From positions 5,146,001 to 5,210,000 of the forward strand of contig OY740804.1 in assembly GCA_963514005.1 (NCBI GenBank): a stretch of DNA of 64,000 bases. The letters run 5' to 3'. The first letter of the stretch is position 1, and the number at the start of each line of letters is the position of its first letter. The position numbers and the translations under genes are program-made. The notes beneath the pieces were generated by a model. The model saw only the letters and a list, made by a program, of their open reading frames with translations. It was not told the DNA's origin and did no database searches. This document shows positions 14,540 to 57,509 of the stretch, one piece after another. This DNA is from Raja brachyura (lineage: Eukaryota).

Positions 14540-14719
14540 CTAAGATCGGAACACCAGAGCAGAATATTCCACCGATTCTGACGAATGGATCTTGACGTCT
14601 TCATTTTGCTCTTTTAGATCCTTAAGATTGGAATAAATTGCAGGGCTTGCTGCGGTCTGAGCTGACGACTGAATGGTCACGGTGGAATATGCAACCGTAT
14701 CTTCAGTTTCTCCTTCAGA
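14540..14719 (-). CDS. Gene A terminal exon, ITIM-bearing tail
   Basis: Acceptor TTTTTTTGTTTCAG; encodes SEGETEDTVAYSTVTIQ...PAIYSNL...SVEYSALVFRS*. VAYSTV and VEYSAL fit the (I/V/L/S)xYxx(L/V) consensus. Confidence 0.85.
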   Translation of the reverse strand, partial: SEGETEDTVAYSTVTIQSSAQTAASPAIYSNLKDLKEQNEDVKIHSSESVEYSALVFRS

Positions 14720-23700: not shown

Positions 23701-26700
23701 ATCCGACTCGAAACATCACCCATCCTTCTCTCCAGAGATGCTGCCTGTCCCGTTGAGTTACTCCAGCTTTTTGAGTTTATCTTCAGTGTAAACCAGCATC
23801 TGCAGTTCCTTCCTACACATACTCGTGCCCAGTGTGATTTGACTGGGTGGCATGCAAAACAACGTTTTTTCACTTTACGACAATAATAAATCCATACGCA
23901 GTTACTGTTCTATTATCATTTTAACTGCAGAAGAAATATTTTGTTGGCTACTTACTTTCTTGAGGGATAGTTTCTGACTGTTTCCTCTTCTTTACAAGTA
24001 GAACTATCGGTAGTACAATCAATAGTCCCAACACGAGTGGAAGTATAATGTGCCATATCTGTGGGGTGCCGCTATTAAAACATGATGGAGAAACATTCAA
24101 TGAGACAAGGAAAAATATATAAAACTAAATTGAACTAGAATGAGGAAGGACACAAAGTGCTGGAATAGCTCAGCAGGTCAGGGCAGCATCCCTGGAGAAT
24201 GTGGAACAGGTGATGTTTCGGGTCGAGACCTTTCTTCAGATCAAAGAAGGGTGTCGACCCGAAACGTGAATCTGAAGAACGTCACCTATCCATGTTCTCT
24301 AGCGATGCTGCCTGACCCGTTGAGTTACTCCAGCACTTTGTATCCCTTTCTGTATTAACCAACTTCTGCAGTTCTTTGTGTTGACAAACTAGAATGTGGT
24401 TGAAACTGGAAGCAAGATGCGAGGAACTGCAGATGCTGGTTTAGATTAAGAGACGGTGTGGCACAATGGCGCAGCGCCAGAGACCCGGGTTCGGAGTTTG
24501 TGCGTTGCCCCCGTGACCTGCGTGGGTTTTCTCCGAGATCCTCGGTTTCCTCCCACACTCCAAAGAGGTGCATAAATGCCTTGGCTTGGTATAAATGTAA
24601 CTTGTCCCTGGTATGTGTAGGATACGTAACCCCTGTCCCACGGTACGACTTCATTCCAAAAGTTCTCCCGAGTTTGCCGACGTTCCCGCTACGTTCATTC
24701 TCCGTGCTTACCACAAGTTTGATTTTTTAAACTCGGGAGAGCTCTTGGGATGAACCCGTACCGTGGGACAGGGCTAGTGTGCGGGGATCGCTGGTCCATG
24801 CGGACTCGGTGGCCGAAGGGCCTGTTTCAGCTCTATATCTAGACAAAACTAAACTAAACATGACGTATTGAACCAATACCAACAACAATCAGTAAATAAT
24901 TATTAGATTGAGGATGACTGCAGAAATCTTACCTTGCTTTGTTGCTTGGTACCTCTGCTTTTGTTATTGTTCCTGAGGTGGGATTTTAAAATAAACATAT
25001 TATACCAATTCATATCAATTGCAACACAACATAACTTAATCTCAAGGAACTGCAGATGCTGCAAATTGCCCTTTAGTCTGTAAGGAGTATATTCAAAAAT
25101 GGGATAACATAAATCTAGTGTGAATGGATGATGGATGGTTGGCATGGACTAGATGGGCTGAAGAGCCTGTTTCTATGTTGCATCTTTCAATTCAATTAAT
25201 ATGTATATTAACAAGAGGTTCAGAATGTCTGTCTAAGAGTAATAAACATATGTGAAATATTTAGTAATAAATTCCACAGGACAAGGTTTAGGGAAAGCTT
25301 TGAAGATATGAGGTTGGGGGAGATGAGAAGAATTAGAAGGCTGTGGAGGCCAAGTCAATGGATATTGTTAAGGCAGAGATTGATAGATTCTTCATTAGTA
25401 CGTGAGTAAGGGGTTATGGGGAGAAGGCAGGAGACTGGGGTTGAGAGGGAAAGATAGATCAGCCATGATTGAATGGCGGAGTAGACTTGATGGGCCGAAT
25501 GGCCTAATTCTGCTCCAACAACCTACCAGAATGGAGAGAGATATGTGGAATATAATATCAGTAAAGACTGTTTGCATGCTGAATTTCTACATAAATGTTG
25601 AATCACAGTAATCTTATGTTGATTTATACCTTTAAACATCACGGTTTTAACCTGTGAGATCTCAAAGTCGACTGGTGTCCTGGCCCCACACCAATATTCC
25701 CCCACATCTCCTTCATCAGTGTGCCTGATCGTGACAGCAAAGTTGTTGAATTTGTTCCCACTGATTGATAATTTGCTGCTGTTGTAGTGTTGAGGCGTCG
25801 CTATGATGCTGCAACTATTCACAGAGACGGCTTTACACAAGAATTTCTCATATTCTTCAAATTGCACCTTGTACTGGCAATGTATAGTGGTGGCATTGCC
25901 CATTATGCCCTTGACTGTGGTACGGTTTAGTATCCGTGAATCTGCTGTAATGGAAACAAAATGAGGCTATGAGAGATCAGAGATGCTGACTGTTGACTTT
26001 AGTGGGGAAGAGCCAAGGATGCACAAACCTTAGTTTAGAGATACAGCCCACCGAGTCTGCACCGACCAGCGATCCCCGCACATTAACACTTTCCTACACA
26101 CACTAGGGATGAGTTATAATTTTACTGAAGCCAATTAACCTACAAACCTTGGAGTGTGGGAGGAAACCGGAGCACCCGGGGAAAACCCACGAAGGCCACG
26201 GGGAGAACGTACAAACTCCGTACAGACAGCACCCGTGGTCAGGATCGAACCCGGGTCTCTGGGGCTGGAAGGCGGAACTCTTCCGCTGTGCCACGGGGTG
26301 GCACCCTCATTAATGGGATGCTGAAGATGGAGAGATAACGAGGTGAAATCAAACGTAGACTCGGTGACCGTTTTGCCGAACACTTGTGCTCGGTCCGCCA
26401 AGGCCTACAGGATCTCCCACTTGTCAACCATTTCAACTCCCCTTCCCATTCCCACATTGATCTTTCTGTCCTGGGCCTCCTCCATTATCAGAGAGAGGCC
26501 CTGGGCAAATTGGAGGAACAGCACTTCATATTTTGCTTGGTTCGCTTACAACCCAGCGGTATGAATGTTGAATTCCCTAATTTTAAATAACTTCCACTAA
26601 CACTCCACTCTCCTCCCCCCCTTGCCCCCTTCCACCCTAGTTCCACCAGCTCTTCCCCATCTCCAAACGTACAGTCTGAGGAATTGCCCTGACCCGCAGC

Positions 26701-29360
26701 GGCTGGCCTTGTTTGTATACTCTAGAATTTAGAAGGAGATCTTATTGAAACATATAAGATTATTAAGGGTTTGGACACGCTAGAGGCAGGAAACTTGTTC
26801 ACGATGTTTGTGGAATCCAGAACCAGGGGCCACAGTTTAAGAATAAGGGGAAAGCCATTTAGAATGGAAATGAGGAAACACTTTTTGTTGTGAGTCTGTG
26901 GAATTCTCTGCCTCAGAGGGCGGTGGAGGCCGGTTCTCTGGATACTTTCAAGAAAGAGCTCGGTAGGGCTCTTAAAGATAGCAGAGTCAGGGGATATGGG
27001 GAGAAGGCAGGAACGGGGTACTGATTGGGGATGATCAGCCATGATCACATTGATCACACTGGCTCGAAGGGCTGAATGGCCTACCCCTGCACCTATTGTC
27101 TATTGTCTATTGACCGAAAATGTCACCTATTCCATTTCTCCTGGGTGCTGCCTATCCCGCTGAATTACTCCAGCATTTTGTGTCTATCTTCGGTGTAAAC
27201 CAGCATCCTTCCTACACACCTTTGTAAGTTAAACTTGCTTAACAATCGGTAGACATAAGGAACTGCAGATGCTGGAATCTGTGTAGAAAGTGCTGCAGCA
27301 ACTCAGCGGGACGGGCAGCACCTCTCCATAACAATCAGTATGCTCATTATCGCACAGCAGTCCAAGTGTATATTATCAGTGAAGCATATTATCAGTCTTA
27401 AAATCTTCAGAAAATCTCTTACCTGTGAAAACATCCAACATGACAATATCTGAAACATTGATTTTCTTTGCCTGACTTTTTCCACACCAGTATGTTCCTG
27501 CATCTTTCTTCTGAAGTTGACTTGTTACAAAAACAGACCCATTGAGTCTTCTCATTGATATCCTTCCACTACGGTCCTCTTCTTTCTCAGTGTTGACTAT
27601 TACTTGACACTCCTCTCCAGAATAGGCTTTGCACCAGCTGACATGTCCTGTTTTCTGAGCGTTTGGACATTCTATAGTCACTGTTTCTCCCTCGCCAGCT
27701 CTTATCACCATCAAGTGAAGCTGTGCTATGGAACCTGTTGGGTGAAATTTAATGCTGGAAATTTTACAGAATCACATCAAAATATTCCCATAACCACCCC
27801 CCCCCCCCCCCCCCCCCCCGGACATAATCTCAGGTTCATAAATTATAGGAGAACATTTAATCCATTCAGTTCATCGTCTGCCCCACCATTTGATAATGGC
27901 TGATCTATCTCTCCCTCTCAACCCAATTCTCCTGCCTTCTTCCCAAAACACCTAACACCCTCTTTACTGACCAAGAATTGGAGAATCTATGCCTTAAAAA
28001 TACCCAATGACTTGACCTCCACAGCCATCTGTGGCAATGGATTCCACTGATTCACCACCCTCTGACTAAATAAATTAATCCGCAACTCCTTTGTACAGGT
28101 ATGTTCTTTGTAACAGGTACAGGTACAGGTCAGTAGCGAAGCGGTAGAGATGCTGCCTTACAGCGCCAGAGACCCGGGTATGTGTTCAGTCTGTATGGTG
28201 TTTGTACGTTCTCCCTGTGACCTGCATAGTTTTTCTCCGGGTGCTCCAGTTTCCTCCCACACTCCAAAGACGTGCAGGTTTGTAGGTTAATTGGCTTAGG
28301 TAAAAATCTTTCCTCGTGTGTAAGATAGAACTAATGTGCGGATATCGCTGGTGGTTCGAAGCGCCTGTTTCCACGCTGTATCTCCAAACTAAACTAAACG
28401 TCCTGTTATTCTGAGGCTGTGCACTCTGGTCCTAGACTCTCCCACCAGTGGAAACATCCTCTCCACATCCACTCTATCCAGGCCTTTCACTATTCGGTAG
28501 GTTTCAATGCCCCCCTCATCCTAAAATGGGAGGTGGGAGGAAACTCGAGCATCCGGAAGAAACCCATATGGTGAAGGGGAGAAACTCCACAAAGACAGCA
28601 TCCGAGGAAAGATTACCGTAAAAATCTTCTGTGCTGCATCTTAACTGAAAATCATAGAACAGTACAGCACAGGAACAGGCCATTTGGCCCACAATCGCCA
28701 TGCTGAACATGATGCCATGACCAACCCCTATCTGCCTGCTCATCATCCATATCTTTCCATTCCCTGCATTTCCATCTGCCCCTGAAGACTGATTGTGGTG
28801 GGGTATTCTCCACACCCCTCTTGCCCCAACGCAATCAGTCTGAAGAAGGGTCCTGGCCCAAGTTATCACCTATCCATGTTCTCTAGAGATGCTGCCTGAC
28901 CCGCTGAGTTACTCCAGCACTTTGTGTCTTTTTTCTCTTACATGCATGTGCCAGTCCGAAAGTCTCTTAAATCCTCTGCTAAATCCCATGCACTTGTCAC
29001 AGTTTGTTTTAACTCTTGCTGAAATGTAAAGTTAATTGGTTCCTTTCTAGGCTCCTGGTCCTTTGGCTGAACAGCAGTGTATCATCACTTATTTAAATAA
29101 CAAGAGCTAATCTTCGGGTTAACATATAACTGCGCTATGGTTCCATGACCATAAGTTAATGGGGCAGAATTAGGCTGTTCGGCCCATCATGTCTTCTCCG
29201 CCATTCAATCATGGCTGATCTATCTCTCCCTCCTAACCCCATTCTCCTGCCTTCTCCCCATAACTCCAGGCACCCGTACTAATCATGAATCTGTCCATCT
29301 TAGCTTTAAGTGGAAAAACTTACTTGAAGTCACAGTGAGAAACAGCAGAATGTAAAACAT
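14540..29360 (-). CDS. Gene A: two-Ig-V-domain CD300/pIgR-like (MDIR-like) inhibitory receptor, ~345 aa; exons 29324-29360, 27423-27734, 25630-25944, 24933-24972, 23956-24071, 15455-15492, 14540-14719
   Basis: All seven exons have GT/AG boundaries with compatible phases (1,1,1,2,1,0) and join into one open 1038-nt frame: leader, IgV, IgV, stalk, TM, tail, ITIM exon. Confidence 0.85.
15455..15492 (-). CDS. Gene A short cytoplasmic exon
   Basis: CTTCTTTGCAG|ATGGTTGC...GCCAAG|GTAAGA; 38 nt, phase 1 to phase 0, encodes GCKNSETPTTAK. Confidence 0.75.
16757..17332. mobile_element. PIF/Harbinger-type MITE
   Basis: ~36-bp TIR AGGGC(A/C)TGTCCTACAAGCATGCAACTCTATGCGAT; 3-bp TAA TSD (16754-16756, 17333-17335); inserted in a CR1 fragment. 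Confidence 0.88.
17690..19253 (+). pseudogene. DIRS gag (ORF1) with in-frame TAG at 18041-18043 and a frameshift near 19040
   Basis: ORFs 17690-18043 and 18047-19081 share a frame; the conserved tail IRPALNPKFAGLCK continues in 19029-19253. Confidence 0.85.
19250..21368 (+). pseudogene. DIRS pol: reverse transcriptase, RNase H and DNA adenine-methylase-like domain (frameshift at T run ~21018-21024)
   Basis: RT motifs IDLQDAYY, LPNGL, YLDD; RNase H TDAS and IDNTTAV; MT-like DLFASRLN, YAFPPF, PDWPTQPWY. Confidence 0.92.
21362..22339 (+). pseudogene. DIRS tyrosine recombinase with one in-frame TAG (21932-21934)
   Basis: ORFs 21266-21934 and 22004-22339 are in the same frame. Catalytic motifs: SAQRVQTL (R), HSTRAAS (HxxR), TAGW, FYNKP (Y). 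Confidence 0.9.
23592..23820. repeat. Penelope-terminus-derived inverted repeat (similar pairs at 15175-15345 and 24140-24378)
   Basis: ~100-bp arms (GCTGGAGTAACTCAG..GCAGCATC..GGAGA..GGTGACG) facing their reverse complements. Confidence 0.7.
23956..24071 (-). CDS. Gene A transmembrane exon (no charged residue)
   Basis: TTTTAATAG|...|GTAAGT; encodes SGTPQIWHIILPLVLGLLIVLPIVLLVKKRKQSETIPQE. Not present in the ORF track. Confidence 0.88.
24631..24773. mobile_element. Small MITE (Harbinger-like) inside a SINE; absent from the paralogous SINE near 52925
   Basis: 17-bp perfect TIR CCCTGTCCCACGGTACG / CGTACCGTGGGACAGGG. Confidence 0.8.
24933..24972 (-). CDS. Gene A stalk exon
   Basis: CCCACCTCAG|GAACAAT...GCAAG|GTAAGA; 40 nt, phase 1 to phase 2, encodes GTITKAEVPSNKA. 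Confidence 0.8.
25630..25944 (-). CDS. Gene A Ig V domain 2
   Basis: TTIHC.Y...KFLCK...C...FAVTI...DVGEYWCG; the extra C-C' cysteine pair is typical of CD300/pIgR/TREM. 315 nt, phase 1-1, NAGNAG acceptor. Confidence 0.92.
26330..26640 (+). mobile_element. Penelope GIY-YIG C-terminal fragment (duplicate at ~54490-54800)
   Basis: GEIKRRLGDRFAEHL...NHFNSPSHSH...LEEQHFIF...QPSGMNVEF. Confidence 0.8.
27423..27734 (-). CDS. Gene A Ig V domain 1
   Basis: GETVTIEC...SWCK....C...DAGTYWCG; 312 nt, phase 1-1, CCCAACAG acceptor and GTAAG donor. Confidence 0.92.
29324..29360 (-). CDS. Gene A signal-peptide exon
   Basis: CCACGATG start, MFYILLFLTVTS, phase-1 GTAAGT donor. Confidence 0.85.
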
Positions 29361-32082
29361 CGTGGTTCCAGTGAGTGAGAGGTCCTTGTTTGCCGATGAA
29401 GCGGTCTCCAATTCGTGCTGTTCACGACTTACTCTTGTTTGATTTAACTCTTGTTCGAATGAACAAATGCTTAGCAATGTGACATAGAGTAAGGAACATT
29501 GACCCATATCCTGTTTTGCAACCTGTTGCATGCACATTGTCAACGGTTCCACTTTGGGGGATTAACTGTGGTTGGCAGAGGTTTGAGGAGAAGACAAGCT
29601 GAACTGAAGCAGGTTTCCAGTGAGGGTATCCACACTTACGTGGTCATATCCCAATCCTGTCCTCCTTAAAGATCAGTGTTGGGAGATGCACTTTTTAAAA
29701 TTAATACTTTGTAATCCAATGTAGAATAAGGAACATTGACAAACATCCTGTTTCACAACTTGCTGAACTTACAGTGCCAGAGACCTGGGTTCAATTGTGA
29801 CTATGGGTGCTGTCTGTACGGGGTTTGTACGTTCTCCCCATGACCGCGTGATTTTCTCCCAGCGTGTTCCGGTTTCCTCGCACTATCCAAAGACGTGTGG
29901 ATTTGTAGGTTATCTGGCTTCACTAAGTTGTAGATTGTCCCTCGTGTGTCGGATGGTCCTAGCGTACGGGGTTGTCTACAGAGATGCTGTCTGACCCGCT
30001 GGGTTACTCTGGCTTTTTGTGTCTACCTTCCGTTTAAACCGGCATCGGCAGTTCCTTTCTAAACAGTTGAAATTATTCCTTCATGGCTTGGAAGAGTGCT
30101 GAGAAGATTTATCAGGATTTTGCCAGGACTCGAAGATCTGAGCTACAAGGAGGATGTGTCTCACCCTGGCCACTCCCTCTTCTCCCCTCTCTCATCAGGC
30201 AAGAGGTACAGAAGTTTGAAAACGCACACCTGCAGATTCACGGAGTTTCTTCCTTCCTTCATGTTATCATGAAACGGAACCTTCTTATTACTAACTAGAG
30301 ACTGATCCTGACCTACCATCCACCTCATTGGAGACCCTTGCACCATCTTTAATTGGACTTTACTGGACTTTATCTTGCACGGAACCTACAGTATTTCCCT
30401 TTATCCTGTATCTGTACACTGTGGATGGCTTGGTTGTAATCACGTATAGTCCTTTTGCTGACTGGATAGCATGCAAGAAAAAAGTTTTCCATTGTGCCTT
30501 GGACCATGTGATAAACTAAATGATAAACTAAACTAAATTTGGATAATCTAGGACTTTATTCCTTGGAGCACAGGAGGCTGAGGGGGGTGGAAGATTGCAA
30601 CCTTCACGTGGTCCGCCCTGTTTCGACTAATGCAATCAACTCAACGTGCACACGCAGAAGATCAAATAGAACAAGTTGTCCTACAACTTTAGGGTGTGCA
30701 TGCCATACGAAAGAAGACGAAGGAGGCTGAGGGGTGATCTTATAGAGGTGTATACACTCATGAGGAGGAATTGATAGGGTGAGTTCACAGAGCCTTTTAC
30801 CCAGAGTAAAAGGGGAATCAAAATCCAGAGGACAAGTTTAAATTGAGGGGGGAGGGATTTAATAGGAACCTGAGGGGCAAGCATTTCACTCAGAATGTGG
30901 TGGGTGTATGGAACGAGCTGTCAAAGGAGGTAGCTAATGCACTTACTATAACAACATTTAAAAGACAATTGGACAGGTACATGGATAAGAATGATTTAGA
31001 GGGATATGGATCAAATGCTGCCAAATGGGACTAAATAGGTGGGGCATTTTGGTCAGCATGGATGGGTGAAGGGTCTATTTCCGTGCGATATAATTATGCG
31101 TCTATGATTCTAATTAATTACCATGATAACCTCTCTGATGCTGCGGAGACATGCTGCCTCGATGGTCAAATCCTACGACTAGGAAGATGAAAGTCAATGT
31201 GATCTTGACCTCCATGGATGGAGTAGACCAGGTATGAAGGTCTTCTTGTATCTCAATGTAGACAGACTTGGAATATCATAAGGTATCATAATATCTAGGG
31301 GCGCAGCGGTAGAGTTGCTGCCTCACAGCACCAGAGACCTGGGTTCGATCCTAACTACAGGTGCCTGTCTGTATGAAGTTTGTACATCCTCCCCGTAACC
31401 TGTGTGGGTTTTCTTCAGGATCTCCAGTTTCCTCCCACACTCCAAAGATGTGCAGGATTGTGGACTAATGGACTTGGTATAATTGTAAATTGTCCCTGAT
31501 GTGTAGGATGGTGTTAGTGTGCAGGGATCGCTGGTCGCCGCAGACTTGGTAGGCCTAAGCGGTTGGTTCAATAGCCAATAGACAATAGATACAGGAGTAG
31601 GCCATTCGGCCTTTTGAGCCAGCACCGCCATTCAATGTGATCATGGCTGACCATCCCCAATCAGTACCCCGTTCCTGCCTTCTCCCCATATCCCCTGACT
31701 CCGCCATCGTTAAGAGCCCTATCTCGCTCTCTCTTGAAAGTATCCAGAGATCCGGCCTCCACCGCCACTGTTCCTCTAAACTAAACCAAACTTAGAAATG
31801 CCAGTGTCAGCTGAGTGGCCTTTCAGTAATAAGGAGAGTACTGTGCCTTGAATTTCAATGGGACAGTTCTGGTTTGCAGTTTTGAGCAATTTGGTATTGG
31901 TATGAGTAAAAATTGTGGTTGTGCAATGAATGCAATCATTTACTGCATGTCAGCGGTGCTGGGAAAGTGTCAAGCATAGTGTGCCCAGGAACGAGAGCTC
32001 CAATTGCAGAACTTTACATTGCGAAATTGTAAGCATGATTGACTCAGGGTAAGAGAGTCAAAGGTTATGGGAACCACTCGAG

Positions 32083-34100
32083 CATGTGAAAACGAGGAAT
32101 TATAGACCAGTTAGTCTTACATTGGTAGTGGGGAAGATGCTGAAATCGATTATTAAGGATGTTATAGCAGCGCATTTGGAACGCAATGACAGGATCGGCC
32201 AAAGTCAGCATGGATTTATGAAGGGGAAATCATGCTTGACTAATCTTTTGGATTTTTTTGAGGATGTAACAAGTAGAATGGATAAGGGAGAGCCAGTGAA
32301 TGTGGAGTATCTGGACTTTCAAAATGCCTTTGACAAAGTCCCACACAAGAGATTAGTGTGCAAAATTAGAGCACATGGTATTGGGGGTAGGGCATTGAAA
32401 TGGATAGAGAACTGTTGGCAGACAGGAAGCAAAGAGTAGGAATTAACAGGTCCTTTTCAGAATGGCAGGCAGTGACTGGTGGGATGCCACAAGGTTCGGT
32501 GCTGGGACCCCGTTATTTACAATATATTATCGATTTAGACGAGGGAATTAAATGTAACATTACTAAGTTTGCAATTGACACAAAATTTGCTGGGTGGCAG
32601 TGTGATATGCAAGGAAGATGCTAAGAGGCTGCAGGGTGACTTGGACTGGTTGGGTGAGTGGGCAGAAGCATGGCAGATGCAGTAAAATGTGGATAAATGT
32701 GAGGTTATGCACTTTGGTGGCAACAGGAAGGCAGATTATTATCTGAATGGTGACAGATTAGGAGAAGGGGAGGAGCATCAAGACCTGGGTGTGCTTGTAC
32801 ATCAGTCACTGAAAGTAAGCATGCTGGTACAACAGACAGTGAAGAAAGCCAATGGCATGGTGGCCTTTATTTGAGAGGATTTGAGTTTAGGAGCAAGGAG
32901 GTCCTACTGCAGTTGTACAAGGCCCTGGTGTGACCACACCTGGAGTATTACGTGCAATTTTGGTCTCCTAATTTGAGGAAGGACATTATTGCTATTGAGG
33001 CAGTGCAGCGTACATTCATCAGGTTAATTTCCAGGATGACGGGACTGACATATGATGATAGAATGTGTCGACTGGGCTTTTATTCATTGGAATTTAGAAG
33101 GTTGAGAGGGTATCTTATAGAAACATATAAAATGGAGCGCAGAAGGTTAAGGGGGGACTTGATAGAGGTCTTTAAAATGATGAGAGGGATAGACAGAGTT
33201 AATGTGGACAAGCTTTTCCCTTTGAGAATAGGGAAGATTCAAACAAGAGGACATGACTTTAGAATTAAGGGACAGAGGTTTAGGGGTAACATGAGGGGGA
33301 ACTTCTTTACTCAGAGAGTGGTAGCGGTGTGGAATGAGCTTCCAGTGGAAGTGGTGGCGGCAGGTTCGTTGGTATCATTTAAAAATAAATTGGATAGGCA
33401 TATGGATGAGAAGGGTATGGAGGGTTATGGTATGAGTGCAGGCAGGTGGGACTAGGGGAAAAAAGTTGTTCGGCACGGACTTGAAGGGCCGAGATGGCCT
33501 GTTTCCGTGCTGTAATTGTTATATGGTTATATGGTTATTCTTAGAGTATTGGACAGGTTAGATGCAGGAAAAATGTTCTCGATGTTGGGGGAGTCAGAAC
33601 CAAGGGACATAGTTTAAAAATAAGTGGTAGGCCATTTAGGACTGAGATGAAGGAAAACCTTTTCACCCGGAGAGTTGTGAATCTGTAGAAGGCAGTGGAG
33701 GCCAATTCATGAAACTTAGTTTAGAAATACAAAATGTAAACAGGCCCTTCGGCCCAACGAGTCCACACTGACCGTTGATCAACCGTTCATATTAGTTCTC
33801 CCGGAGACACACTTTTCACCCGGAGAGTTGTGAATCTGTGGAATTCTCTGCCATCGAAGGCAGCGATCGCCAATTCACTGGATGTATTCAAGAGAGAGTT
33901 AGATTTAGCTCTTAGGGTTAAGGAATCAGGGGATATGGGGAAATAGCTGGAACGGGGTACTGATGTCACTGAACCTTAATTGGTGCATGTGACAATAAAT
34001 GTGAACTTGAACTTGATTGTGGATGATCAGCCTTGATCATATTGAATGGCTCAAAGAGCCGAATGGCCTCATCCTGCACCTATTGTCTATGTTTCGATGT
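32083..34100 (+). mobile_element. CR1-clade LINE RT fragment with a nested second CR1 3' end (~33133-33536); duplicate at ~60457-62395
   Basis: NYRPVSLT, QHGFMKGKSCLTNL, YLDFQNAFDKVPH, PQGSVLGP motifs with frameshifts; the nested piece ends in (TATGGT)n. Confidence 0.9.
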
Positions 34101-34101
34101 T

Positions 34102-46288: not shown

Positions 46289-46385
46289 CTGGTGTGAGAC
46301 CAACAGCAACAAGAACCAACAGAGCGACTGTTCCCCTGGATCTGGGCCGTTTCTGGTGGGTGAATTCTCCCTGTCCCACTGCCAT
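46289..46385 (-). other. Candidate orphan or alternative signal-peptide exon
   Basis: GACATGG start; MAVGQGEFTHQKRPRSRGTVALLVLVAVGLTP then phase-1 CAG|GTAAAT donor. Confidence 0.45.
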
Positions 46386-46920: not shown

Positions 46921-49900
46921 ACACAGAATGCAAGGGCGGAAATGTAGAAACAAGGAACTGTAGATACTGGTTTATACCAAAGATGGACACAAAGTGCTGG
47001 TGCATCTCAGTGGGTCAAGCAGCTTCTCTGGAGGATGGGCACCATTTCAGGATGGGATCCTTCAGAGTGGTCCTGACCTCCCAACTACCCCATTCGAGAC
47101 CTTGGAACTATCTTTAATCGGATTTTACTAGACTATCTTGCAACAGATTCCTTGAATGCAAACATGAAAAGTCATCATGGTGCTTCCTCATTTCACAAGC
47201 GGCTGGGTCTCACATGCATCTTCTATGTGTGACCTGTGTTCTAGGTTCAACATTTCCCACGCTGTTTCTAGCAAGAGTCCTGTGTGACTTTACCACGCTA
47301 ACCGAGCCACACCAAGGACCAGTGTTGGGTTCTGCAGTGCAAGTTCAGTGGGTGAAAACTATTGAGTGAGTTAGAGAGTTGTTGGTTCAGTTCCCTCTGC
47401 AGACGCCGAGCACAGAGGGAGAGCTGTACTGAGGGAGCTCTGCATTGGAAACATAGAAGCATAGAAGCATAGAAAATAGGCGCTGGAGTAGGCCATTCGG
47501 CCCTTCAAACCAGCACCGCCATTCAATATGATCATGGCTGATCATCCTAAATCAGTACCCAGTTCCTGCTTTCTCCCCATATCCCTTGATTCCGTTTGTC
47601 CTAAGCGCTGTGTCTAAAGTTGCTGGAGGTGCTGTCACTCTGATGAGGCATTTATCTGGTCTGCTGCTCTGCTGTCTGCTCTCTCAAGCCTGCTCTCTCC
47701 CTTCAGAGCGGCACGGTGGTGCAGCGGTTAGCTGCTGCCTCACAGCGCCAGAGACCCGGGTTCGATCTTGACTACGGGTGCTGTCTGTGTGGAGTTGGAA
47801 CGTTCTCCCTGTGACCTCGTGGGTTTCCTCCATGTGCACCGGATTCCTCCCACATCCCTAATCCATGCGAGTTTGTACGTTAAACACCTCTACAAGATTG
47901 TCGCAAATGTGTAGGGAATGGATGAGAAAGTGGGATAACAGAACTAGTGTGTACAGGTAGACAAAAATGCTGGAGAAACTGCGTTTTTGTCTAGCTTCGC
48001 TTTTCCAGCATCTGCAGTTCCTTCTTAAACATAGTGTGTACAGGTGATCAATGGTTGGCGTGGACTCGGTGGATCAATGGGCCTGTTTCCATGCGGTATC
48101 TCTAAACCAAACTAATTCTACTCGTATCACTTATGACCTTATGACAAAAATTCAGAAACGTTACCCAGGAGAAATAAGACAACGCCAAACGTGATCAGGT
48201 AAGTCCACTCACGTCACCAGATAAACACCAGATAGATTCTTAATTAGTAATTAGTACATGTGTCAGAGGTTATGGAGAGAAGGCAGGAGAATGGGGTTGG
48301 GAGGGAGAGATAGATCAGCCATGATTGAATGGTGAAGTAAACTTCATGGGCCGAATGGCCTAATTCTACTCTTATCACATGGCCTTATGACAAAAATTCA
48401 GCCATCTTTATTTACGTTCGATTATATTAACCATTATTCAATGTGCAGGGTTTTACACAGCAATTCAATTAGTAGTAAAGTTAAAAGTTCACATTCTGGA
48501 GAGCCAGCTTTGAGTTCTAGTCTATGTACTGCTGTCTTTTGGGTGAATGTCAGGATGTACAGACATGTCTGCAAACATAGGTACAGAATTCGGCAATTTG
48601 CTCCATCGAGTCTACTCCACCACTCAATCATGGATGATCTATCTTTCCCCCTCCATCCCATTCTCCTGTCTTCTCCCCACAACTTTTGACACCCTGAGTG
48701 AACCTGTCTCCAATTTTAAAATATCCATTGACTTGGCCTCCACAGCCGTCTGTGGCAATGGATTCCACAGATTCATCACCCTCTGGCTAAAGAAATTCCT
48801 CCTCAAGTGGTCAAGTTAGATTGGACATAGGTGGGGTGTGGTGATGCTGTAGGGTCAAGGTGATGAGATTTGTACATCTCCAACTGGTGAACACCCTCTC
48901 TGGCCCTGAAAAGCTAAACGATGATTATTCCATCAGAATAACAATATTGATATAAAGTTTACCTTTAATTTTTATCTTATTCTTCTAACGTGTGTCCACA
49001 GTTCAATACTTGTAATCATTTAACCATTTTTATATCCCCATTGCTCAATGGTTCAATGGTACTTTATTGTCTAATGCACGTGGGTACAGTGACATTTCTT
49101 TTGCATAGAATTCAGTCAAAATCTTACTTTATATAAGCACAGCTGAAGCTAAGAACAAGAGTATTAATAGCAGATTATATGATGCAGTGCACAAAAGTTG
49201 CCACATTTCTGGCGGTATCTTATATTTTTAACGATCAAATTGGTAAAAAAGTAGTCTTATTTTGGGTTTAAAGGCCCGTTGTCGTGGAGACGGCACTGGG
49301 TGGGAGTTGCAGGGTTCAGCCTGGCCTGGCGATGTTGTCGGTGCCTCCACCACCGCCGCTCCGTGCCGCTCCAGGCCGTGTCCGGTCCGCGCGCTCGTCC
49401 CCGACCTCTGTGGGACCTCCAGCGGCACCCGATCCATCGGCTGCTGCAGGGCCTCCAGCAGCCCACTCGCACTCCGCCCACACCTCGACCCACCAACGCA
49501 CCCTTTTCCCCTCGCCTCCCACGGCCGTCTCCATGCGAGGTGAGGCCCCACCCAGCCAGCTCACCGGCGCTGTTCCTCTCCTCCCTCCACCACTGCTGAC
49601 CCCATCTCCAAGGTCTCGGCTGTTTTTTCCCTTGAATAAAAATTAAAACACAATTTATAATCTCTACCATCAAATTTTACCCGAGGATATGACCCTGGGC
49701 GGCACAGTGGCGCAGCGGTAGAGTTGCTGCCTTACAGCGCCAGAGACCCGGGTTTGATCATGACTACGGGTGCTGTCTGTACGGAGTTTGTATGCTCTGC
49801 CTGTGACAGCGTGGGTTTTCTCCGGGTGCTCCGGTTTCCTCCCACAATCCAAAGACGTGTAGTTTTGTAGGTTAATTGGCCTCTGTATAATTGTAAATTG

Positions 49901-49975
49901 TCCCTCGTGTGTATGATAGTGCGAGAGTACAAGGTGATCATTGGTTGGCGCGGACTTGGTTGGATGTTGGGCCTA

Positions 49976-51601: not shown

Positions 51602-51699
51602 AATGTCCACACTTTATCTCTACAATTCTAAAGTAAATTCCCATCATTCCCAATTGAATTTAATGTGAACACCAGAGTGAAGAGATTGCAAACTTTTAC

Positions 51700-51807
51700 C
51701 TTTTAAAAGTTGTCACACAGCTGATGGAAAGCGGGAAGAGAAGCAGAACTCCAAAGAGTACCCAGCGTAACACACCCCAAACACGGCGAACATTCAGCAC
51801 GATGTCC
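51700..51807 (-). CDS. Gene B transmembrane exon with an intramembrane arginine
   Basis: TTGGATTTCCAG|G...AAAAG|GTAAAA; encodes RDIVLNVRRVWGVLRWVLFGVLLLFPLSISCVTTFK. Not present in the ORF track. Confidence 0.8.
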
Positions 51808-54800
51808 CTGGAAATCCAAGGAAATATTATTACTTCCACACAGAATTATCAAAGGTCAAGGCTGGCAATTTGTTTTCATCATATTGCACACGGAATCATT
51901 CAGTGTGATCCAAGGTTGTGGCGTAGACATTGGTGAGATGTTTATATCGCAACATGCACCCATTCCTTGGAGGTGTTCCATGACTACATACATTAACAAC
52001 TTAGATGTTCATGTTGGTGGTCAGACATACAGCACGAAAACATGTCCTTTGACCCAATTTCCCCACGATGACCAAGACGCCGTTATCTACACTAGTCCCA
52101 TCTGCCGGCCTTAGATGTTATTGTTGGAAGTATGATTAACGAGTTTACAGATTACACCAAAATTGTATCATTTTGGATAGTACGATAATCATAGACCACA
52201 GAGGGATAAGAAGCAACTGGTATGTTGGGCAGAGCAATGCCAGCAGGCATTGAACCGTGATATGTGTGAAGTTATTTGTTTTTGGCATCAAATAAGGGTA
52301 GACGTTCACAATGGTAGGGCCACTGGGTGTACTAAGGACAGAGGGACTTTAGTCAGGGCCAAGGAGTATTTATCAATGGACTGGAATGTGATCAGCCACG
52401 CTTTCTCAAAGTACTGGGACTGATTTTACAGACAACAGGATACGTTTCCCCTCTACTCAAACTTTCACAACTGAGAAAGGTTGTAGATGGTCACAAAATG
52501 CTGGAGTAACTCAGCGGGTCAGGCAGCAGGAATGCTGCCCTCACCCGATGTAGCAAAGTCCACCTGGTCTGTACTCTTCCAGGACAGCACCAAGAGAGGA
52601 AGATCAGGCTGTGGAGATTGGAACGTAGATGATTTTGAACAATGTGTCTGCTGTTGTATAGTAAGTAACAATAACCCACTGCGATCGCCAGTAAACTCGC
52701 TGATTGTATTTATCCTTCTTGTTAATCATGGGCTGCTCGCTTCAGCCGTTGCCTGTGGTGAAGCTGTGCACGGCTGAGTTGGTCCTTTGAGTCTGTATGG
52801 AGTTTCTACGTTCTCCCCGTGACTGGGGTTTTCTCCGAGATCTTCGGTTTCCTCCCATAATCCAAAGAAGTGCATAAATGTCTTGGCTTGGTATAAATGT
52901 AAATTGTCCCTGGTATGTGTAGGATACTGTTAGTGTGCGGGGATCGCTGCTCCGTACGGACTCGGTGGGCCGAAGGGCCTGTTTCTGTGCTCTATCTCTA
53001 AACTAAACTAAACTAAACATGACGTATTGAACCAATACCAACAACAATCAGTAAATAATTATTAGATTGAGGATGACTGCAGAAATCTTACCTTGCTTTG
53101 TTGCTTGGTACCTCTGGTTTTGTTATCGTTCCTGAGGTGGGTTGTTAAAATAAACATATTATACCAATTCATATCAATTACAACACAACATAACCTAATC
53201 TCAAGGAACTACAGATGCTGCAAATTGCCCTTTAGTCTGTAAGGAGTAGATGCAAAAATGGGATAACATAAATCTAGTGTGAATGGATGATGGATGGTTG
53301 GCATGGACTAGATGGGCTGAAGAGCCTGTTTCCATGTTGCATCTTTCAATTCAATTAATATGTATATTAACAAGAGGTTCAGAATGTCTGTCTAAGAGTA
53401 ATAAACATATGTGAAATATTTAGTAATAAATTCCACAGGACAAGGTTTAGGGAAAGCTTTGAAGATATGAGGTTGGGGGAGATGAGAAGAATTAGAAGGC
53501 TGTGGAGGCCAAGTCAATGGATATTTTTAAGGCAGAGATTGATAGATTCTTCATTAGTACGTGAGTAAGGGGTTATGGGGAGAAGGCAGGAAACTGGGGT
53601 TGAGAGGGAAAGATAGATCAGCCATGATTGAATGGCGGAGTAGACTTGATGGGCCGAATGGCCTAATTCTGCTCCAACAACCTACCAGAATGGAGAGAGA
53701 TATGTGGAATATAATATCAGTAAAGACTGTTTGCATGCTGAATTTCTACATAAATGTTGAATCACAGTAATCTTATGTTGATTTATACCTTTAAACATCA
53801 CGGTTTTAACCTGTGAGATCTCAAAGTCGACTGGTGTCCTGGCCCCACACCAATATTCCCCCACATCTCCTTCATCAGTGTGCCTGATCGTGAAAGCAAA
53901 GTTGTTGAATTTGTTCCCACTGATTGATAATTTGCTGCTGTTGTAGTGTTGAGGCGTCACTATGATGCTGCAACTATTCACAGAGACGACTTTACACAAG
54001 AATTTCTCATATTCTTCAAATTGCACCTTGTATCGGCAATGTATAGTGGTGGCATTGCCCATTATGCCCTTGACTGTGGTACGGTTTAGTATCCGTGAAT
54101 CTGCTGTAATGGAAACAAAATGAGGGTATGAGAGATCAGAGATGCTGACTGTTGACTTTATTAGGCCAAGAGCCAAGGATGCACAAACCTTAGTTTAGAG
54201 ATACAGCCCACCGAGTCTGCACCGACCAGCGATCCCCGCACATTAACACTTTCCTACACACACTAGGGATGAGTTATAATTTTACTGAAGCCAATTAACC
54301 TACAAACCTTGGAGTGTGGGAGGAAACCGGAGCACCCGGGGAAAACCCACGAAGGTCATGGCGAGAACGTACAAACTCCGTACAGACAGCACCCGTGGCC
54401 AGGATCGAACCCGGGTCACTGGGGCTGGAAGGCGGAACTCTTCCGCTGTGCCACGGGGTGGCACCCTCATTAATGGGATGCTGAAGATGGAGAGATAACG
54501 AGGTGAAATCAAACGTAGACTCGGCGACCGTTTTGCCGAACACTTGTGCTCGGTCCGCCAAGGCCTACAGGATCTCCCACTTGTCAACCATTTCAACTCC
54601 CCTTCCCATTCCCACATTGATCTTTCTGTCCTGGGCCTCCTCCATTATCAGAGAGAGGCCCTGGGCAAATTGGAGGAACAGCACTTCATATTTTGCTTGG
54701 TTCGCTTACAACCCAGCGGTATGAATGTTGAATTCCCTAATTTTAAGTAACTTCCACTAACACTCCACTCTCCTCCCCACCTTGCCCCCTTCCACCCTAG

Positions 54801-57509
54801 TTCCACCAGCTCTTCCCCATCTCCAAACTTACAGTCTGAGGAATTGCCCTGACCCGCAGCGGCTGGCCTTGTTTGTATACTCTAGAATTTAGAAGGAGAT
54901 CTTATTGAAACATATAAGATTATTAAGGGTTTGGACACGCTAGAGGCAGGAAACTTGTTCACAATGTTTGTGGAATCCAGAACCAGGGGCCACAGTTTAA
55001 GAATAAGGGGAAAGCCATTTAGAATGGAGATGAGGAAACACTTTTTGTTGTGAGTCTGTGAAATTCTCTGCCTCAGAGGGCGGTGGAGGCCGGTTCTCTG
55101 GATACTTTCAAGAAAGAGCTCGGTAGGGCTCTTAAAGATAGCAGAGTCGGGGGATATGGGGAGAAGGCAGGAACGAGGTACTGATTGGGGATGATCAGCC
55201 ATGATCACATTGATCACACTGGCTCGAAGGGCTGAATGGCCTACCCCTGCACCTATTGTCTATTGTCTATTGACCGAAAATGTCACCTATTCCATTTCTC
55301 CTGGGTGCTGCCTATCCCCCTGAATTACTCCGGCATTTTGTATCTATCTTCGGTGTAAACAAGCACCCTCCTACACACCTTTGTAAGTTAAACTTGCTTA
55401 ACAATCGGTAGACATAAGGAACTGCAGATGCTGGAATCTGTGTAGAAAGTGCTGCAGTAACTCAGCGGGACGGGCAGCACCTCTCCATAACAATCAGTAT
55501 GCTCATTATGGCACAGTAGTCCAAGTGTATATTATCAGTGAAGCATATTATCAGTCTTAAAATCTTCAGAAAATCTCTTACCTGTGAAAACATCCAACAT
55601 GACAATATCTGAAACATTGATTTTCTTTGCCTGAAGTGTTCCACACCAGTATGTTCCTGCATCATTCTTCTGAAGTTGACTTGTTACAAAAACAGACCCA
55701 TTGAGTCTTCTCATTGATATCCTTCCACTACGGTCCTCTTCTTTCTCAGTGTTGACTATTACTTGACACCCCACTCGAGAATAGGCTTTGCACCAGCTGA
55801 CATGTCCTGTTTTCTGAGCGTTTGGACATTCTATAGTCACTGTTTCTCCCTCGCCAGCTCTTATCACCATCAAGTGAAGCTGTGCTATGGAACCTGTTGG
55901 GTGAAATTTAATGCTGTAAATTTTACAGAATCACATCAAAATATTCCCATAACCACCCCCCCCCCACCCCCCCCCCGGACATAATCTCAGGTTCATAAAT
56001 TATAGGAGAACATTTAATCCATTCAGTTCATCGTCTGCCCCATAATGGCTGATCTATCTCTCCCTCTCAACCCAATTCTCCTGCCTTCTTCCCAAAACAC
56101 CTAACACCCTTTTAACTGACCAAGAATTGGAGAATCTATGCCTTAAAAATACCCAATGACTTGACCTCCACAGCCATCTGTGGCAATGGATTCCACTGAT
56201 TCACCACCCTCTGACTAAATAAATTAATCCGCAACTCCTTTGTACAGGTATGTTCTTTGTAACAGGTACAGGTACAGGTCAGTAGCGAAGCGGTAGAGAT
56301 GCTGCCTTACAGCGCCAGAGACCCGGGTATGTGTTCAGTCTGTATGGTGTTTGTACGTTCTCCCTGTGACCTGCATAGTTTTTCTCCGGGTGCTCCAGTT
56401 TCCTCCCACACTCCAAAGACGTGCAGGTTTGTAGGTTAATTGGCTTAGGTAAAAATCTTTCCTCGTGTGTAAGATAGAACTAATGTGCGGATATCGCTGG
56501 TGGTTCGAAGCGCCTGTTTCCACGCTGTATCTCCAAACTAAACTAAACGTCCTGTTATTCTGAGGCTGTGCACTCTGGTCCTAGACTCTCCCACCAGTGG
56601 AAACATCCTCTCCACATCCACTCTATCCAGGCCTTTCACTATTCGGTAGGTTTCAATGCCCCCCTCATCCTAAAATGGGAGGTGGGAGGAAACTCGAGCA
56701 TCCGGAAGAAACCCATATGGTGACGGGGAGAAACTCCACAAAGACAGCATCCGAGGAAAGATTACCGTAAAAATCTTCTGTGCTGCATCTTAACTGAAAA
56801 TCATAGAACAGTACAGCACAGGAACAGGCCATTTGGCCCACAATCGCCATGCTGAACATGATGCCATGACCAACCCCTATCTGCCTGCTCATCATCCATA
56901 TCTTTCCATTCCCTGCATTTCCATCTGCCCCTGCAGACTGATTGTGGTGGGGTATTCTCCACACCCCTCTTGCCCCAACGCAATCAGTCTGAAGAAGGGT
57001 CCTGGCCCAAGTTATCACCTATCCATGTTCTCTAGAGATGCTGCCTGACCCGCTGAGTTACTCCAGCACTTTGTGTCTTTTTTCTCTTACATGCATGTGC
57101 CAGTCCGAAAGTCTCTTAAATCCTCTGCTAAATCCCATGCACTTGTCACAGTTTGTTTTAACTCTTGCTGAAATGTAAAGTTAATTGGTTCCTTTCTAGG
57201 CTCCTGGTCCTTTGGCTGAACAGCAGTGTATCATCACTTATTTAAATAACAAGAGCTAATCTTCGGGTTAACATATAACTGCGCTATGGTTCCATGACCA
57301 TAAGTTAATGGGGCAGAATTAGGCTGTTCGGCCCATCATGTCTTCTCCGCCATTCAATCATGGCTGATCTATCTCTCCCTCCTAACCCCATTCTCCTGCC
57401 TTCTCCCCATAACTCCAGGCACCCGTACTAATCATGAATCTGTCCATCTTAGCTTTAAGTGGAAAAACTTACTTGAAGTCACAGTGAGAAACAGCAGAAT
57501 GTAAAACAT
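51700..57509 (-). CDS. Gene B: two-Ig-V-domain CD300/pIgR-like putative activating receptor; exons 57473-57509, 55582-55893, 53789-54103, 53092-53131, 51700-51807, terminal exon unresolved
   Basis: Exons 1-4 duplicate gene A with intact splice sites. The phase-2 stalk exon joins in frame to a distinct TM exon. Confidence 0.82.
53789..54103 (-). CDS. Gene B Ig V domain 2
   Basis: Same exon structure as 25630-25944; 4 amino-acid differences. Confidence 0.92.
55582..55893 (-). CDS. Gene B Ig V domain 1
   Basis: Same exon structure as 27423-27734; 6 amino-acid differences. Confidence 0.92.
57473..57509 (-). CDS. Gene B signal-peptide exon
   Basis: Identical to the gene A leader MFYILLFLTVTS with a GTAAGT donor. 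Confidence 0.85.

What the first reader, a model, noticed from the sequence alone, without database searches (positions are those of the whole stretch)
14540..57509. Hidden paired activating/inhibitory Ig receptor system with a shared ectodomain
Seen: two minus-strand genes share an almost identical leader, IgV, IgV and stalk, but the phase-2 stalk exon splices onto unrelated TM exons. Gene A has an uncharged TM (IWHIILPLVLGLLIVLPIVLLV-KKRK) and a tail with ITIMs VAYSTV and VEYSAL plus AIYSNL. Gene B has VWGVLRWVLFGVLLLFPLSI with an Arg near the outer leaflet, and no ITIM exon was found. Established: the extra C-C' disulfide V domain marks the CD300/pIgR/TREM group (skate MDIRs), and a TM Arg in this position pairs with ITAM adaptors such as FcR-gamma in activating receptors (LILRA, NKp46, GPVI). 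Inference: this is a recently generated paired-receptor locus in a cartilaginous fish, analogous to KIR, Ly49 or CD300a/c pairs. Neither TM exon is in the ORF track.
Basis: partly seen in the sequence, partly recalled or inferred. Interest (0 to 1): 0.9.

Follow-up and report, generated by a model that had tools for sequence, protein, structure and literature searches.

The report
Young inhibitory/activating skate receptor pair
Two neighbouring immune-receptor genes of a skate-like fish share a 95%-identical outer part, but one ends in an inhibitory tail and the other in an arginine-bearing membrane anchor of the type carried by a neighbouring receptor gene family: a young example of the well-known "paired receptor" design, with expression of the second gene still unproven.

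Summary
A direct duplication (24775-35707 vs 52931-64000, 98.4-99.6% identical, cut by the window end) carries promoter, leader, two V-set Ig exons and stalk of a minus-strand receptor gene. Both TM exons lie outside the duplicated block.

Gene A is a complete 7-exon, 345-aa ITIM receptor. Its closest full-length relative is the annotated Amblyraja radiata "pIgR-like" protein.

Gene B is a complete 6-exon, 293-aa reading frame. The same ectodomain (11 aa differences) joins in phase to an Arg-containing TM exon (51807-51700).

That TM and tail are 92% and about 73% identical to those of a different, three-V-domain Leucoraja erinacea pIgR-like protein. The W-x3-R-W TM module recurs in chimaera, sharks and rays. 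Stingray models pair the homologous two-V ectodomain with either module.

So gene B is most likely a young chimera made at the duplication junction.

The adaptor is unknown, and FcR-gamma was reported absent from cartilaginous fish in 2014. Skate MDIRs are already cited as activating/inhibitory families. This is a new member of a known kind. The scan has not reported this pair on other DNA.

The parts
29324..29360 (-). Gene A exon 1: leader (MFYILLFLTVTS, ends phase 1)
   Evidence: identical to gene B leader
27423..27734 (-). Gene A exon 2: V-set Ig domain 1 with four cysteines (extra C-C' pair)
   Evidence: Pfam V-set E 2.6e-10; pIgR/CD300 best PDB relatives; AG/GT flanks
25630..25944 (-). 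Gene A exon 3: V-set Ig domain 2 with four cysteines
24933..24972 (-). Gene A exon 4: 40-nt stalk (phase 1 to phase 2)
23956..24071 (-). Gene A exon 5: uncharged TM plus KKRK stop-transfer
   Evidence: 85% identical to A. radiata P0161
15455..15492 (-).
   Evidence: same residues as in A. radiata P0161
14540..14719 (-). Gene A exon 7: tail with ITIMs VAYSTV and VEYSAL, plus AIYSNL, and stop
   Evidence: 92% identical to P0161, 74% to Pristis P0002
57473..57509 (-). Gene B exon 1: leader, identical to gene A
55582..55893 (-). Gene B exon 2: V-set Ig domain 1 (6 aa differences from A)
53789..54103 (-). Gene B exon 3: V-set Ig domain 2 (4 aa differences from A)
53092..53131 (-). Gene B exon 4: stalk (1 aa difference), ends phase 2
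51700..51807 (-). Gene B exon 5: Arg-containing TM module (W-x3-R-W), phase 2 to phase 2, pyrimidine-rich AG acceptor, GTAAAA donor
   Evidence: 92% identical to L. erinacea XP_055510911.1 TM
49561..49630 (-).
   Evidence: 16 of 22 residues identical to the last residues of P0042, by eye from the alignment
24775..35707 (.). Duplicated block, copy 1 (gene A 5' part and at least 6.3 kb upstream)
52931..64000 (.). Duplicated block, copy 2 (gene B 5' part and upstream); homology runs to the window end
52791..53011 (.). SINE at the duplication boundary in the stalk-TM intron of gene B. Its body is 89% identical to the SINE body at 24493-24625; to its right identity rises to 94-98%
46289..46385 (-). 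Orphan leader exon of a P0042-type gene (ATG, signal peptide, phase-1 GT donor), downstream of the gene B tail; no cognate Ig exons in the window

Best explanation
A real direct duplication placed a second copy of gene A's promoter, leader, two pIgR/CD300-type V domains and stalk about 1.1 kb upstream of an Arg-TM exon and short-tail exon. That module is the type used by a different neighbouring pIgR-like receptor (L. erinacea XP_055510911.1 type).

The copied stalk exon ends in phase 2 and the Arg-TM exon starts in phase 2. Its acceptor is the first strong one downstream. The junction therefore creates a chimeric 293-aa gene B.

Gene A (345 aa) would signal through two ITIMs by recruiting SHP-type phosphatases. 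Gene B would see nearly the same ligands. It has no signalling motif of its own and would couple through its membrane Arg to an acidic-TM ITAM adaptor of unknown identity.

Shown here: the exons, phases, splice sites, homology of each module and the duplication. Inferred: transcription and splicing of gene B, adaptor coupling, phosphatase recruitment and shared ligand.
For: - Duplication and its boundary.
- Complete open models with canonical splice sites and compatible phases.
- Gene A matches the annotated A. radiata protein exon for exon, including the small exon.
- TM-B and its tail match P0042 at 92% and about 73% identity.
- The Arg-TM module is conserved in 13 distinct representatives, from chimaera to rays, on different ectodomains.
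- Precedent for this combination: Hypanus sabinus XP_059806113-117 and Hemitrygon models carry the homologous two-V ectodomain with either the ITIM tail or the Arg-TM.
- Both copies share at least 6.3 kb of upstream sequence at 98.6-99.6% identity, so similar regulation is plausible.
- An AATAAA lies 493 nt after the gene B stop.
- Only one gene-A-like protein each was found for L. erinacea and A. radiata, and neither has an Arg-TM. This fits a lineage-specific chimera.
Against: - There is no RNA evidence.
- At about 1-2% divergence, intact reading frames do not prove function.
- Coding differences (13 nonsynonymous-codon, 1 synonymous) are no denser than in the local introns (2.1% vs 1.9%). 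There is no sign of purifying selection since the split.
- Gene B has a 368-bp TE-like insertion 205 bp upstream of its ATG.
- The tail exon uses an AAG acceptor, which is weaker than CAG or TAG.
- The right end of the duplication is outside the window.
- FcR-gamma was reported absent from cartilaginous fish (PMC4016189), so the adaptor is unknown.
Confidence: 0.62

Rival explanations
1. Gene B is a by-product of the duplication that is not used as a receptor. It may be silent, mis-spliced, or truncated or secreted, and the Arg-TM and tail exons may be leftovers of a neighbouring P0042-type gene.
For: - No transcript evidence was obtained.
- There is no excess of synonymous over nonsynonymous change.
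- A TE-like insertion sits 205 bp upstream of the ATG.
- An orphan P0042-type leader at 46385-46289 with no Ig exons shows that this neighbourhood already contains gene debris.
- No activating counterpart with this ectodomain is annotated in the two annotated skates.
Against: - All six exons are open and have canonical splice sites and matching phases.
- The TM-B acceptor has a good pyrimidine tract and lies only 1.28 kb from a strong stalk donor.
- The promoter region is a 99% copy of gene A's.
- The same ectodomain/Arg-TM combination is annotated in stingrays.
Confidence: 0.22
2. The second copy is an assembly artefact: a falsely duplicated haplotype. The true locus would have one set of ectodomain exons.
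For: - Divergence upstream of about 27965 is only about 0.2-0.5%, within the range of allelic variation.
- Read-level checks could not be run.
- The far end of copy 2 is outside the window.
Against: - There are no N runs anywhere in the window.
- The copies differ by several indels: a 368-bp TE-like insertion in B and a 143-bp hairpin element in A.
- Homology decays through a SINE (98% to 94% to 89%) and then stops. Alleles would continue on both sides.
- 17 kb of unrelated sequence, including LINE ORFs, separates the copies.
Confidence: 0.07
3. A and B are parts of one complex transcription unit. Ectodomain exons would be joined alternatively to the Arg-TM cassette or, by long-range splicing, to the TM-A/ITIM cassette, so the pair are isoforms rather than two genes.
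For: NCBI models for Hypanus sabinus list ITIM forms (X1, X2) and Arg-TM forms (X3, X4) with identical V domains. Their accessions are consecutive, which suggests isoforms of one gene. In the window, the leader, Ig, stalk and both TM exons are phase-compatible.
Against: - Gene A has its own complete leader and promoter copy.
- For gene B's stalk to reach TM-A, a 29-kb splice would have to skip a polyadenylation signal, the tail exon and all of gene A's 5' exons.
- In Hypanus the two forms have different stalk residues, so even there two cassettes or two genes are involved.
Confidence: 0.06

Closest known systems
Amblyraja radiata polymeric immunoglobulin receptor-like protein XP_032898784.1 (P0161, 354 aa)
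   Same: Same exon-by-exon architecture as gene A: leader, two V domains, stalk, uncharged TM, the GCKNSETPTTAK exon and the ITIM tail. Identity is 78-92% per exon.
   Different: It is from another species or is a paralogue. It has an upstream in-frame ATG, which is AAG in the window. No Arg-TM partner with this ectodomain was found for that species.
Leucoraja erinacea polymeric immunoglobulin receptor-like protein XP_055510911.1 (P0042, 468 aa)
   Same: Its TM (33/36 residues), tail (about 16/22) and leader (32/35) match the window exons at 51807-51700, 49630-49561 and 46385-46289.
   Different: Its ectodomain has three different V domains and a mucin-like stalk, none of which is present in the window. 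In the window its type of TM follows gene A's type of ectodomain.
Hypanus sabinus pIgR-like isoforms X1-X4 (XP_059806113.1 to XP_059806117.1) and Hemitrygon akajei XP_072886333/4
   Same: A homologous two-V ectodomain (44-50% identity to P0001) is joined either to a TM/ITIM tail or to a W-x3-R-W TM with a short tail.
   Different: These are annotated as isoforms of one gene with identical V domains. The two forms differ from the stalk onward, so the switch point lies before the stalk rather than after it. The models are automatic.
Skate modular domain immune-type receptors (MDIR; Cannon et al. 2006, cited in PMC3031540)
   Same: Skate multigene family of activating and inhibitory receptors with V domains resembling CD300, TREM and pIgR (PMC3031540). 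The modular re-use of TM/tail cassettes seen here fits the name.
   Different: No MDIR sequence could be fetched and the paper is not held, so identity with a named MDIR subfamily is untested.
Mammalian CD300a / CD300c (CMRF35) pair
   Same: pIgR-type V domain with an extra disulfide. One partner has ITIMs; the other has a charged TM and short tail. The genes are clustered, and NCBI names the sawfish relative 'CMRF35-like molecule 8'.
   Different: CD300 proteins have one V domain. To my knowledge their activating members use Glu or Lys in the TM, not Arg. No orthology is implied.
Paired receptors kept alike by recombination (Siglec-5/14, KIR3DL1/S1, SIRP); from my own knowledge
   Same: Near-identical ectodomains sit on opposite signalling modules, arising by unequal crossover or gene conversion. 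The divergence here is patchy, 1.9% vs 0.2%.
   Different: They belong to different Ig families (I/C2-set or Siglec V-set) and are known to be expressed. Here expression is unproven.

Membership tests
pIgR/CD300-type V-set domain group | V-set Ig fold | tested here: met
   Ig1 passes Pfam's V-set cut-off: PF07686 E 2.6e-10 (A) and 1.9e-9 (B), 40.9 and 38.1 bits against a cut-off of 26. Ig2 scores below the cut-off, 21.7 and 19.9 bits, but matches pIgR D5 at E 1e-24.
pIgR/CD300-type V-set domain group | Second cysteine pair (C-C') in addition to the B-F pair | tested here: met
   Each domain has four cysteines. The extra pair of Ig1 (WCK...ECQ) aligns with the extra pair of pIgR domains in the alignments.
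pIgR/CD300-type V-set domain group | Closest solved relatives are pIgR, CD300 or NKp44 rather than antibody or TCR V domains | tested here: met
   pIgR E 1.4e-25 and 1.2e-24; CD300 chains E 2e-7 to 3e-9; NKp44 (1hkf) E 4e-5. Antibody V domains score E 1e-5 or weaker.
True pIgR (polymeric Ig transport receptor) | Long cytoplasmic tail with transcytosis signals; binding of J-chain polymeric Ig | tested here: not met
   The gene A tail carries ITIMs and is homologous to CD300A-like tails. The gene B tail is 22 residues. Ig binding is not testable here. 'pIgR-like' is only NCBI's automatic name.
ITIM-bearing inhibitory receptor | At least one cytoplasmic [S/I/V/L]xYxx[I/V/L] | tested here: met
   VAYSTV and VEYSAL fit the consensus. 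AIYSNL does not, because of Ala at -2. The motifs are conserved in 14 relatives.
ITIM-bearing inhibitory receptor | Phosphotyrosine-dependent recruitment of SHP-1, SHP-2 or SHIP | not testable with these tools
   Needs biochemistry.
Adaptor-coupled activating receptor | Basic residue inside the TM helix, with a short tail lacking signalling motifs | tested here: met
   Arg is the 6th residue of a 23-residue hydrophobic stretch. The 22-residue tail has no Tyr. The Arg and both flanking Trp are invariant in all 19 motif instances from family members.
Adaptor-coupled activating receptor | Physical association with an acidic-TM ITAM adaptor (FcR-gamma, DAP12, CD3-zeta) | not testable with these tools
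PMC4016189 reports no FcR-gamma homologue in cartilaginous-fish data of 2014.
Paired activating/inhibitory receptors | Highly similar ectodomains on opposite signalling modules, encoded by linked genes | tested here: met
   About 95% amino-acid identity over leader to stalk (11 differences). The genes are 28 kb apart on the same strand.
Paired activating/inhibitory receptors | Both members expressed, ideally on the same cells | not tested
Skate MDIR family (Cannon et al. 2006) | Sequence membership in one of the described MDIR clusters | not testable with these tools
   MDIR sequences (ABC86796 and others, listed in PMC3031540) could not be retrieved. The paper is not held. The features described for MDIRs in PMC3031540 are matched.

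The most novel reading that the evidence does not exclude
Gene B is a newly born, expressed activating receptor whose origin is still legible in the DNA. A duplication breaking in a SINE of the stalk-TM intron swapped the signalling cassette between two different subfamilies of pIgR/CD300-like receptors. Patchy gene conversion and replacement changes in both copies (13 of 14 coding differences fall in amino-acid-changing codons, several in predicted loops) then followed. The stingray models put the switch point on the other side of the stalk exon. The same ectodomain would therefore have acquired the Arg-TM cassette independently at least twice in batoids, making cassette shuffling a recurrent route to paired receptors in the oldest jawed vertebrates.
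Probability: 0.3. Interest if true: 0.55.

Novelty: new member of a known kind. Interest (0 to 1): 0.4.

Why it matters
Paired inhibitory and activating receptors are thought to arise when pathogens exploit an inhibitory receptor and the host answers with an activating look-alike. Most well-studied pairs are mammalian and old enough that the founding rearrangement is blurred.

Here the founding event can be read directly. The breakpoint, the source type of the activating cassette and the phase-compatible exons are all visible, in a cartilaginous fish. The same Arg-TM cassette is conserved from chimaera to rays.

If gene B is expressed, the locus would be a clean natural example of signalling-cassette shuffling. 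It would also give a handle for finding the unknown ITAM adaptor that this conserved W-x3-R-W membrane segment uses in Chondrichthyes.

The design itself is not new. The family is annotated in related species, so the gain is an instructive case rather than a new principle.

Tried and rejected
- **Read evidence.** Nothing was laid. Those places were sent to no search tool afterwards. I left the SINE copy that overlaps them out of the SINE alignment.
- **Locus comparison.** The L. erinacea locus could not be compared and no dN/dS for the TM exon could be computed.
- **TM and tail search.** The search for homologous proteins on the P0042 TM and tail region found only P0042 itself.
- **ESM Atlas.** The TM and tail gave only sub-threshold leads: TREM-like transcript at 0.81, and unrelated helices by structure. 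I discarded them.
- **Literature.** Two searches for MDIR papers were swamped by unrelated words. The MDIR paper and a review are not held. A search for shark FCER1G/TYROBP found nothing useful.
- **Positive selection.** I considered it, but coding divergence (2.1%) equals local intron divergence (1.9%). Thirteen of 14 nonsynonymous is not significant (my estimate, p about 0.1), so I do not claim it.
- **Joined models.** The joined spliced proteins of A and B were not searched, folded or sent to any tool. All searches were exon by exon or with natural database proteins.
- **Complex prediction.** Complex prediction was not used because no skate adaptor sequence was available.
- I replaced it with the repeat finder.
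Full report
**1. What is in the sequence**

The window is vertebrate DNA rich in SINE, LINE and DIRS-like elements. It has no N runs.

Self-comparison shows that 24775-35707 and 52931-64000 are direct copies with 98.4-99.6% identity. The offset is about 28.16 kb, and the homology runs to the window's last base. The duplication is therefore at least 11 kb long. It may be a full 28-kb tandem unit whose second copy is cut by the window end.

Both copies carry four minus-strand exons: a leader, two Ig exons and a 40-nt stalk. The leaders are identical. Ig1 differs at 7 of 312 nt, Ig2 at 5 of 315 nt, and the stalk at 2 of 40 nt. This gives 11 amino-acid differences in about 234 residues.

**2. Gene models**

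I worked exon by exon. Every exon is flanked by AG/GT and the phases chain correctly.

Gene A has seven exons:
- 29360-29324, leader
- 27734-27423, Ig1
- 25944-25630, Ig2
- 24972-24933, stalk
- 24071-23956, uncharged TM followed by KKRK
- 14719-14540, tail

The CDS is 1038 nt, or 345 aa. The tail holds two consensus ITIMs, VAYSTV and VEYSAL. AIYSNL has Ala at -2 and is not canonical.

Gene B has six exons:
- 57509-57473, leader
- 55893-55582, Ig1
- 54103-53789, Ig2
- 53131-53092, stalk
- 51807-51700, TM with Arg as the sixth residue of a 23-residue hydrophobic stretch

The CDS is 882 nt, or 293 aa. If the TM-B donor were not used, read-through hits a stop at once, which still gives a short-tailed Arg-TM protein. 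An AATAAA lies 493 nt after the gene B stop.

**3. What the domains are**

Both Ig exons hit Pfam V-set. Ig1 passes the curated cut-off; Ig2 scores just below it.

Against solved structures, Ig1 and Ig2 are closest to pIgR (E 1.4e-25 and 1.2e-24). CD300/CMRF35 chains come next (E 2e-7 to 3e-9), then NKp44. Antibody and TCR V domains score far weaker.

Each domain has four cysteines. The extra pair of Ig1 aligns with the extra pair of pIgR domains.

**4. Relatives**

The closest database proteins are from skates. L. erinacea LOC129708894 (P0001, 283 aa) is 80-90% identical per exon. A. radiata XP_032898784.1 (P0161, 354 aa) has exactly gene A's architecture, including the GCKNSETPTTAK exon and the ITIM tail, which is 92% identical. 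The window therefore comes from a skate-like species, or a paralogue, close to both but identical to neither.

The ITIM tail module is conserved in sawfish (NCBI name: CMRF35-like molecule 8), in three sharks and in stingrays.

The gene B TM exon is 33/36 identical to the TM of L. erinacea XP_055510911.1 (P0042). That protein has a different ectodomain of three other V domains and a mucin-like stalk. The exon at 49630-49561 matches its last 22 residues.

A W-x3-R-W-[ILV] membrane motif, with invariant Trp, Arg, Trp, occurs in 13 distinct representatives (19 instances among the fetched proteins, several of them isoforms). The named ones come from Callorhinchus, Mustelus, Hypanus, Hemitrygon, Mobula and Leucoraja, and they carry ectodomains of different lengths. 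The exon is therefore an old, reusable family module and not a chance ORF.

P0001 and P0042 lie on the same 33.95-Mb L. erinacea record. Their accession numbers are eight apart. The two gene types are thus neighbours there too.

**5. Origin of gene B**

The high-identity homology starts at 24775/52931, inside a SINE in the stalk-TM intron.

To the left, the SINE bodies (24493-24625 and 52799-52927) are 89% identical. They share a 6-bp deletion that three other copies lack, and beyond them homology stops. Copy A carries a 143-bp hairpin element at 24631-24773.

Two readings fit:
- Unequal crossover between two related SINEs.
- An older duplication whose interior has been homogenised by gene conversion.

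The second reading fits the patchy divergence: about 1.9% from 24775 to 27965, and about 0.2% from there to 29564.

In both readings gene A is the contiguous ancestral gene and gene B is the junction product. A copy of A's 5' part now sits 1.1 kb upstream of an Arg-TM exon whose acceptor already served a phase-2 stalk exon. In L. erinacea the matching TM belongs to a gene with a different ectodomain, which suggests that the cassette was taken over from a gene of that type.

Downstream of gene B's tail lies an intact but orphan P0042-type leader exon (46385-46289). No matching Ig exons occur anywhere in the window. The neighbourhood has evidently been rearranged before.

**6. Precedent**

In Hypanus sabinus, NCBI models XP_059806113/114 (ITIM tail) and XP_059806115/117 (Arg-TM) have identical V domains homologous to those here, and differ from the stalk onward. 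Hemitrygon has the Arg-TM form.

The combination proposed for gene B therefore exists in annotated relatives. The switch point there is before the stalk rather than after it, which suggests an independent event.

Only one gene-A-like protein each was found for L. erinacea and A. radiata, and neither has an Arg-TM.

**7. How it most likely works**

Gene A is an inhibitory receptor that signals through two ITIMs.

Gene B has a near-identical ligand-binding part and no motif of its own. Its membrane Arg would pair with an acidic-TM ITAM adaptor.

This part is inference from the general rule for such receptors. The adaptor is unknown. Akula et al. 2014 found no FcR-gamma homologue in the cartilaginous-fish data then available (PMC4016189).

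**8. Weak points**

- No transcript evidence could be obtained. No run on record as RNA held the stretch. I sent those places to no search tool afterwards.
- Coding differences are 13 in nonsynonymous codons and 1 synonymous. Their density equals that of the local introns, so neither purifying nor positive selection can be claimed.
- Comparison with the two skate proteins suggests that both copies carry derived changes, rather more in A than in B. This does not look like one-sided decay (by eye).
- Gene B has a 368-bp TE-like insertion 205 bp upstream of its ATG.
- An assembly artefact is unlikely given the indels, the decay of homology within a SINE and the absence of gaps. It is not excluded without reads.

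**9. Comparison with what is known, and verdict**

Skate MDIRs are cited as multigene families of activating and inhibitory receptors with CD300/TREM/pIgR-like V domains (PMC3031540). Paired receptors are a textbook design.

This locus is a new, young member of that kind. Its value is that the founding rearrangement and the source type of the activating cassette can still be read.

Interest is moderate, at 0.4.

Noticed in passing
window 46289-46385 (-): An intact orphan leader exon: ATG, signal peptide, phase-1 GT donor. It is 91% identical to residues 1-35 of L. erinacea XP_055510911.1. It lies downstream of gene B's tail, and no matching Ig exons occur anywhere in the window. Its phase would allow splicing to gene A's Ig1 exon, so it is either a relic or an alternative first exon.
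   Followed up: partly
window 57714-58081: A 368-bp TE-like insertion present only in copy B, 205 bp upstream of gene B's ATG. It resembles other repeats at 11591-11946, 26763-27110 and 54923-55270. It may alter gene B's promoter.
   Followed up: partly
window 24631-24773: A 143-bp hairpin or MITE-like element: 45-nt inverted arms, 89% complementary, 53 nt apart. It is inserted in the SINE of gene A's stalk-TM intron, exactly where BLAST breaks the A/B homology, and is absent from copy B.
   Followed up: partly
window 24775-29564 vs 52931-57713: Divergence between the copies is stepwise. It is about 1.9% from the boundary to about 27965 (exons and introns alike) and about 0.2% from there through the leader and promoter. 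This suggests a gene-conversion tract edge.
   Followed up: partly
window 27476-27479, 27505, 27611-27618 (Ig1); 25735-25875 (Ig2): Thirteen of 14 coding differences between A and B fall in amino-acid-changing codons. Several come as clustered multi-base changes (GEE vs RVG, KS vs TL), next to the extra cysteine pair and just after the YWCG motif. Compared with the two skate proteins, both copies carry derived states. Not statistically distinguishable from neutrality here.
   Followed up: partly
window 23953-23960 (-) and P0001: The L. erinacea model LOC129708894 ends ...ESK. That is what read-through of the TM-exon donor gives in the window as well (GAA A|GT AAG TAG). A tail-less isoform of the inhibitory gene, made by intron retention, is conceivable.
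   Followed up: no
window 57533-57510 / 29384-29361 (-): The upstream in-frame ATG that starts the annotated A. radiata and L. erinacea proteins (MDLSL...) is AAG in both copies here. Translation must start at MFYILL.
   Followed up: no
window 17000-22400 (+) and 35600-42100 (+): Large retroelement ORFs sit inside gene A's TM-to-cytoplasmic intron (a 654-aa reverse-transcriptase-like ORF at 19250-21214 plus neighbours) and between the two genes (LINE-like ORFs at 38395-39534 and 39822-42083). These explain the 8.5-kb intron and much of the 17-kb spacer.
   Followed up: no
PMC4016189: A 2014 survey reported no pIgR homologues in cartilaginous fish. Yet these V domains match solved pIgR structures at E 1e-24 to 1e-25, and NCBI names many chondrichthyan relatives 'pIgR-like'. 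pIgR-type V domains clearly predate bony fish, as the MDIR work already implied.
   Followed up: no
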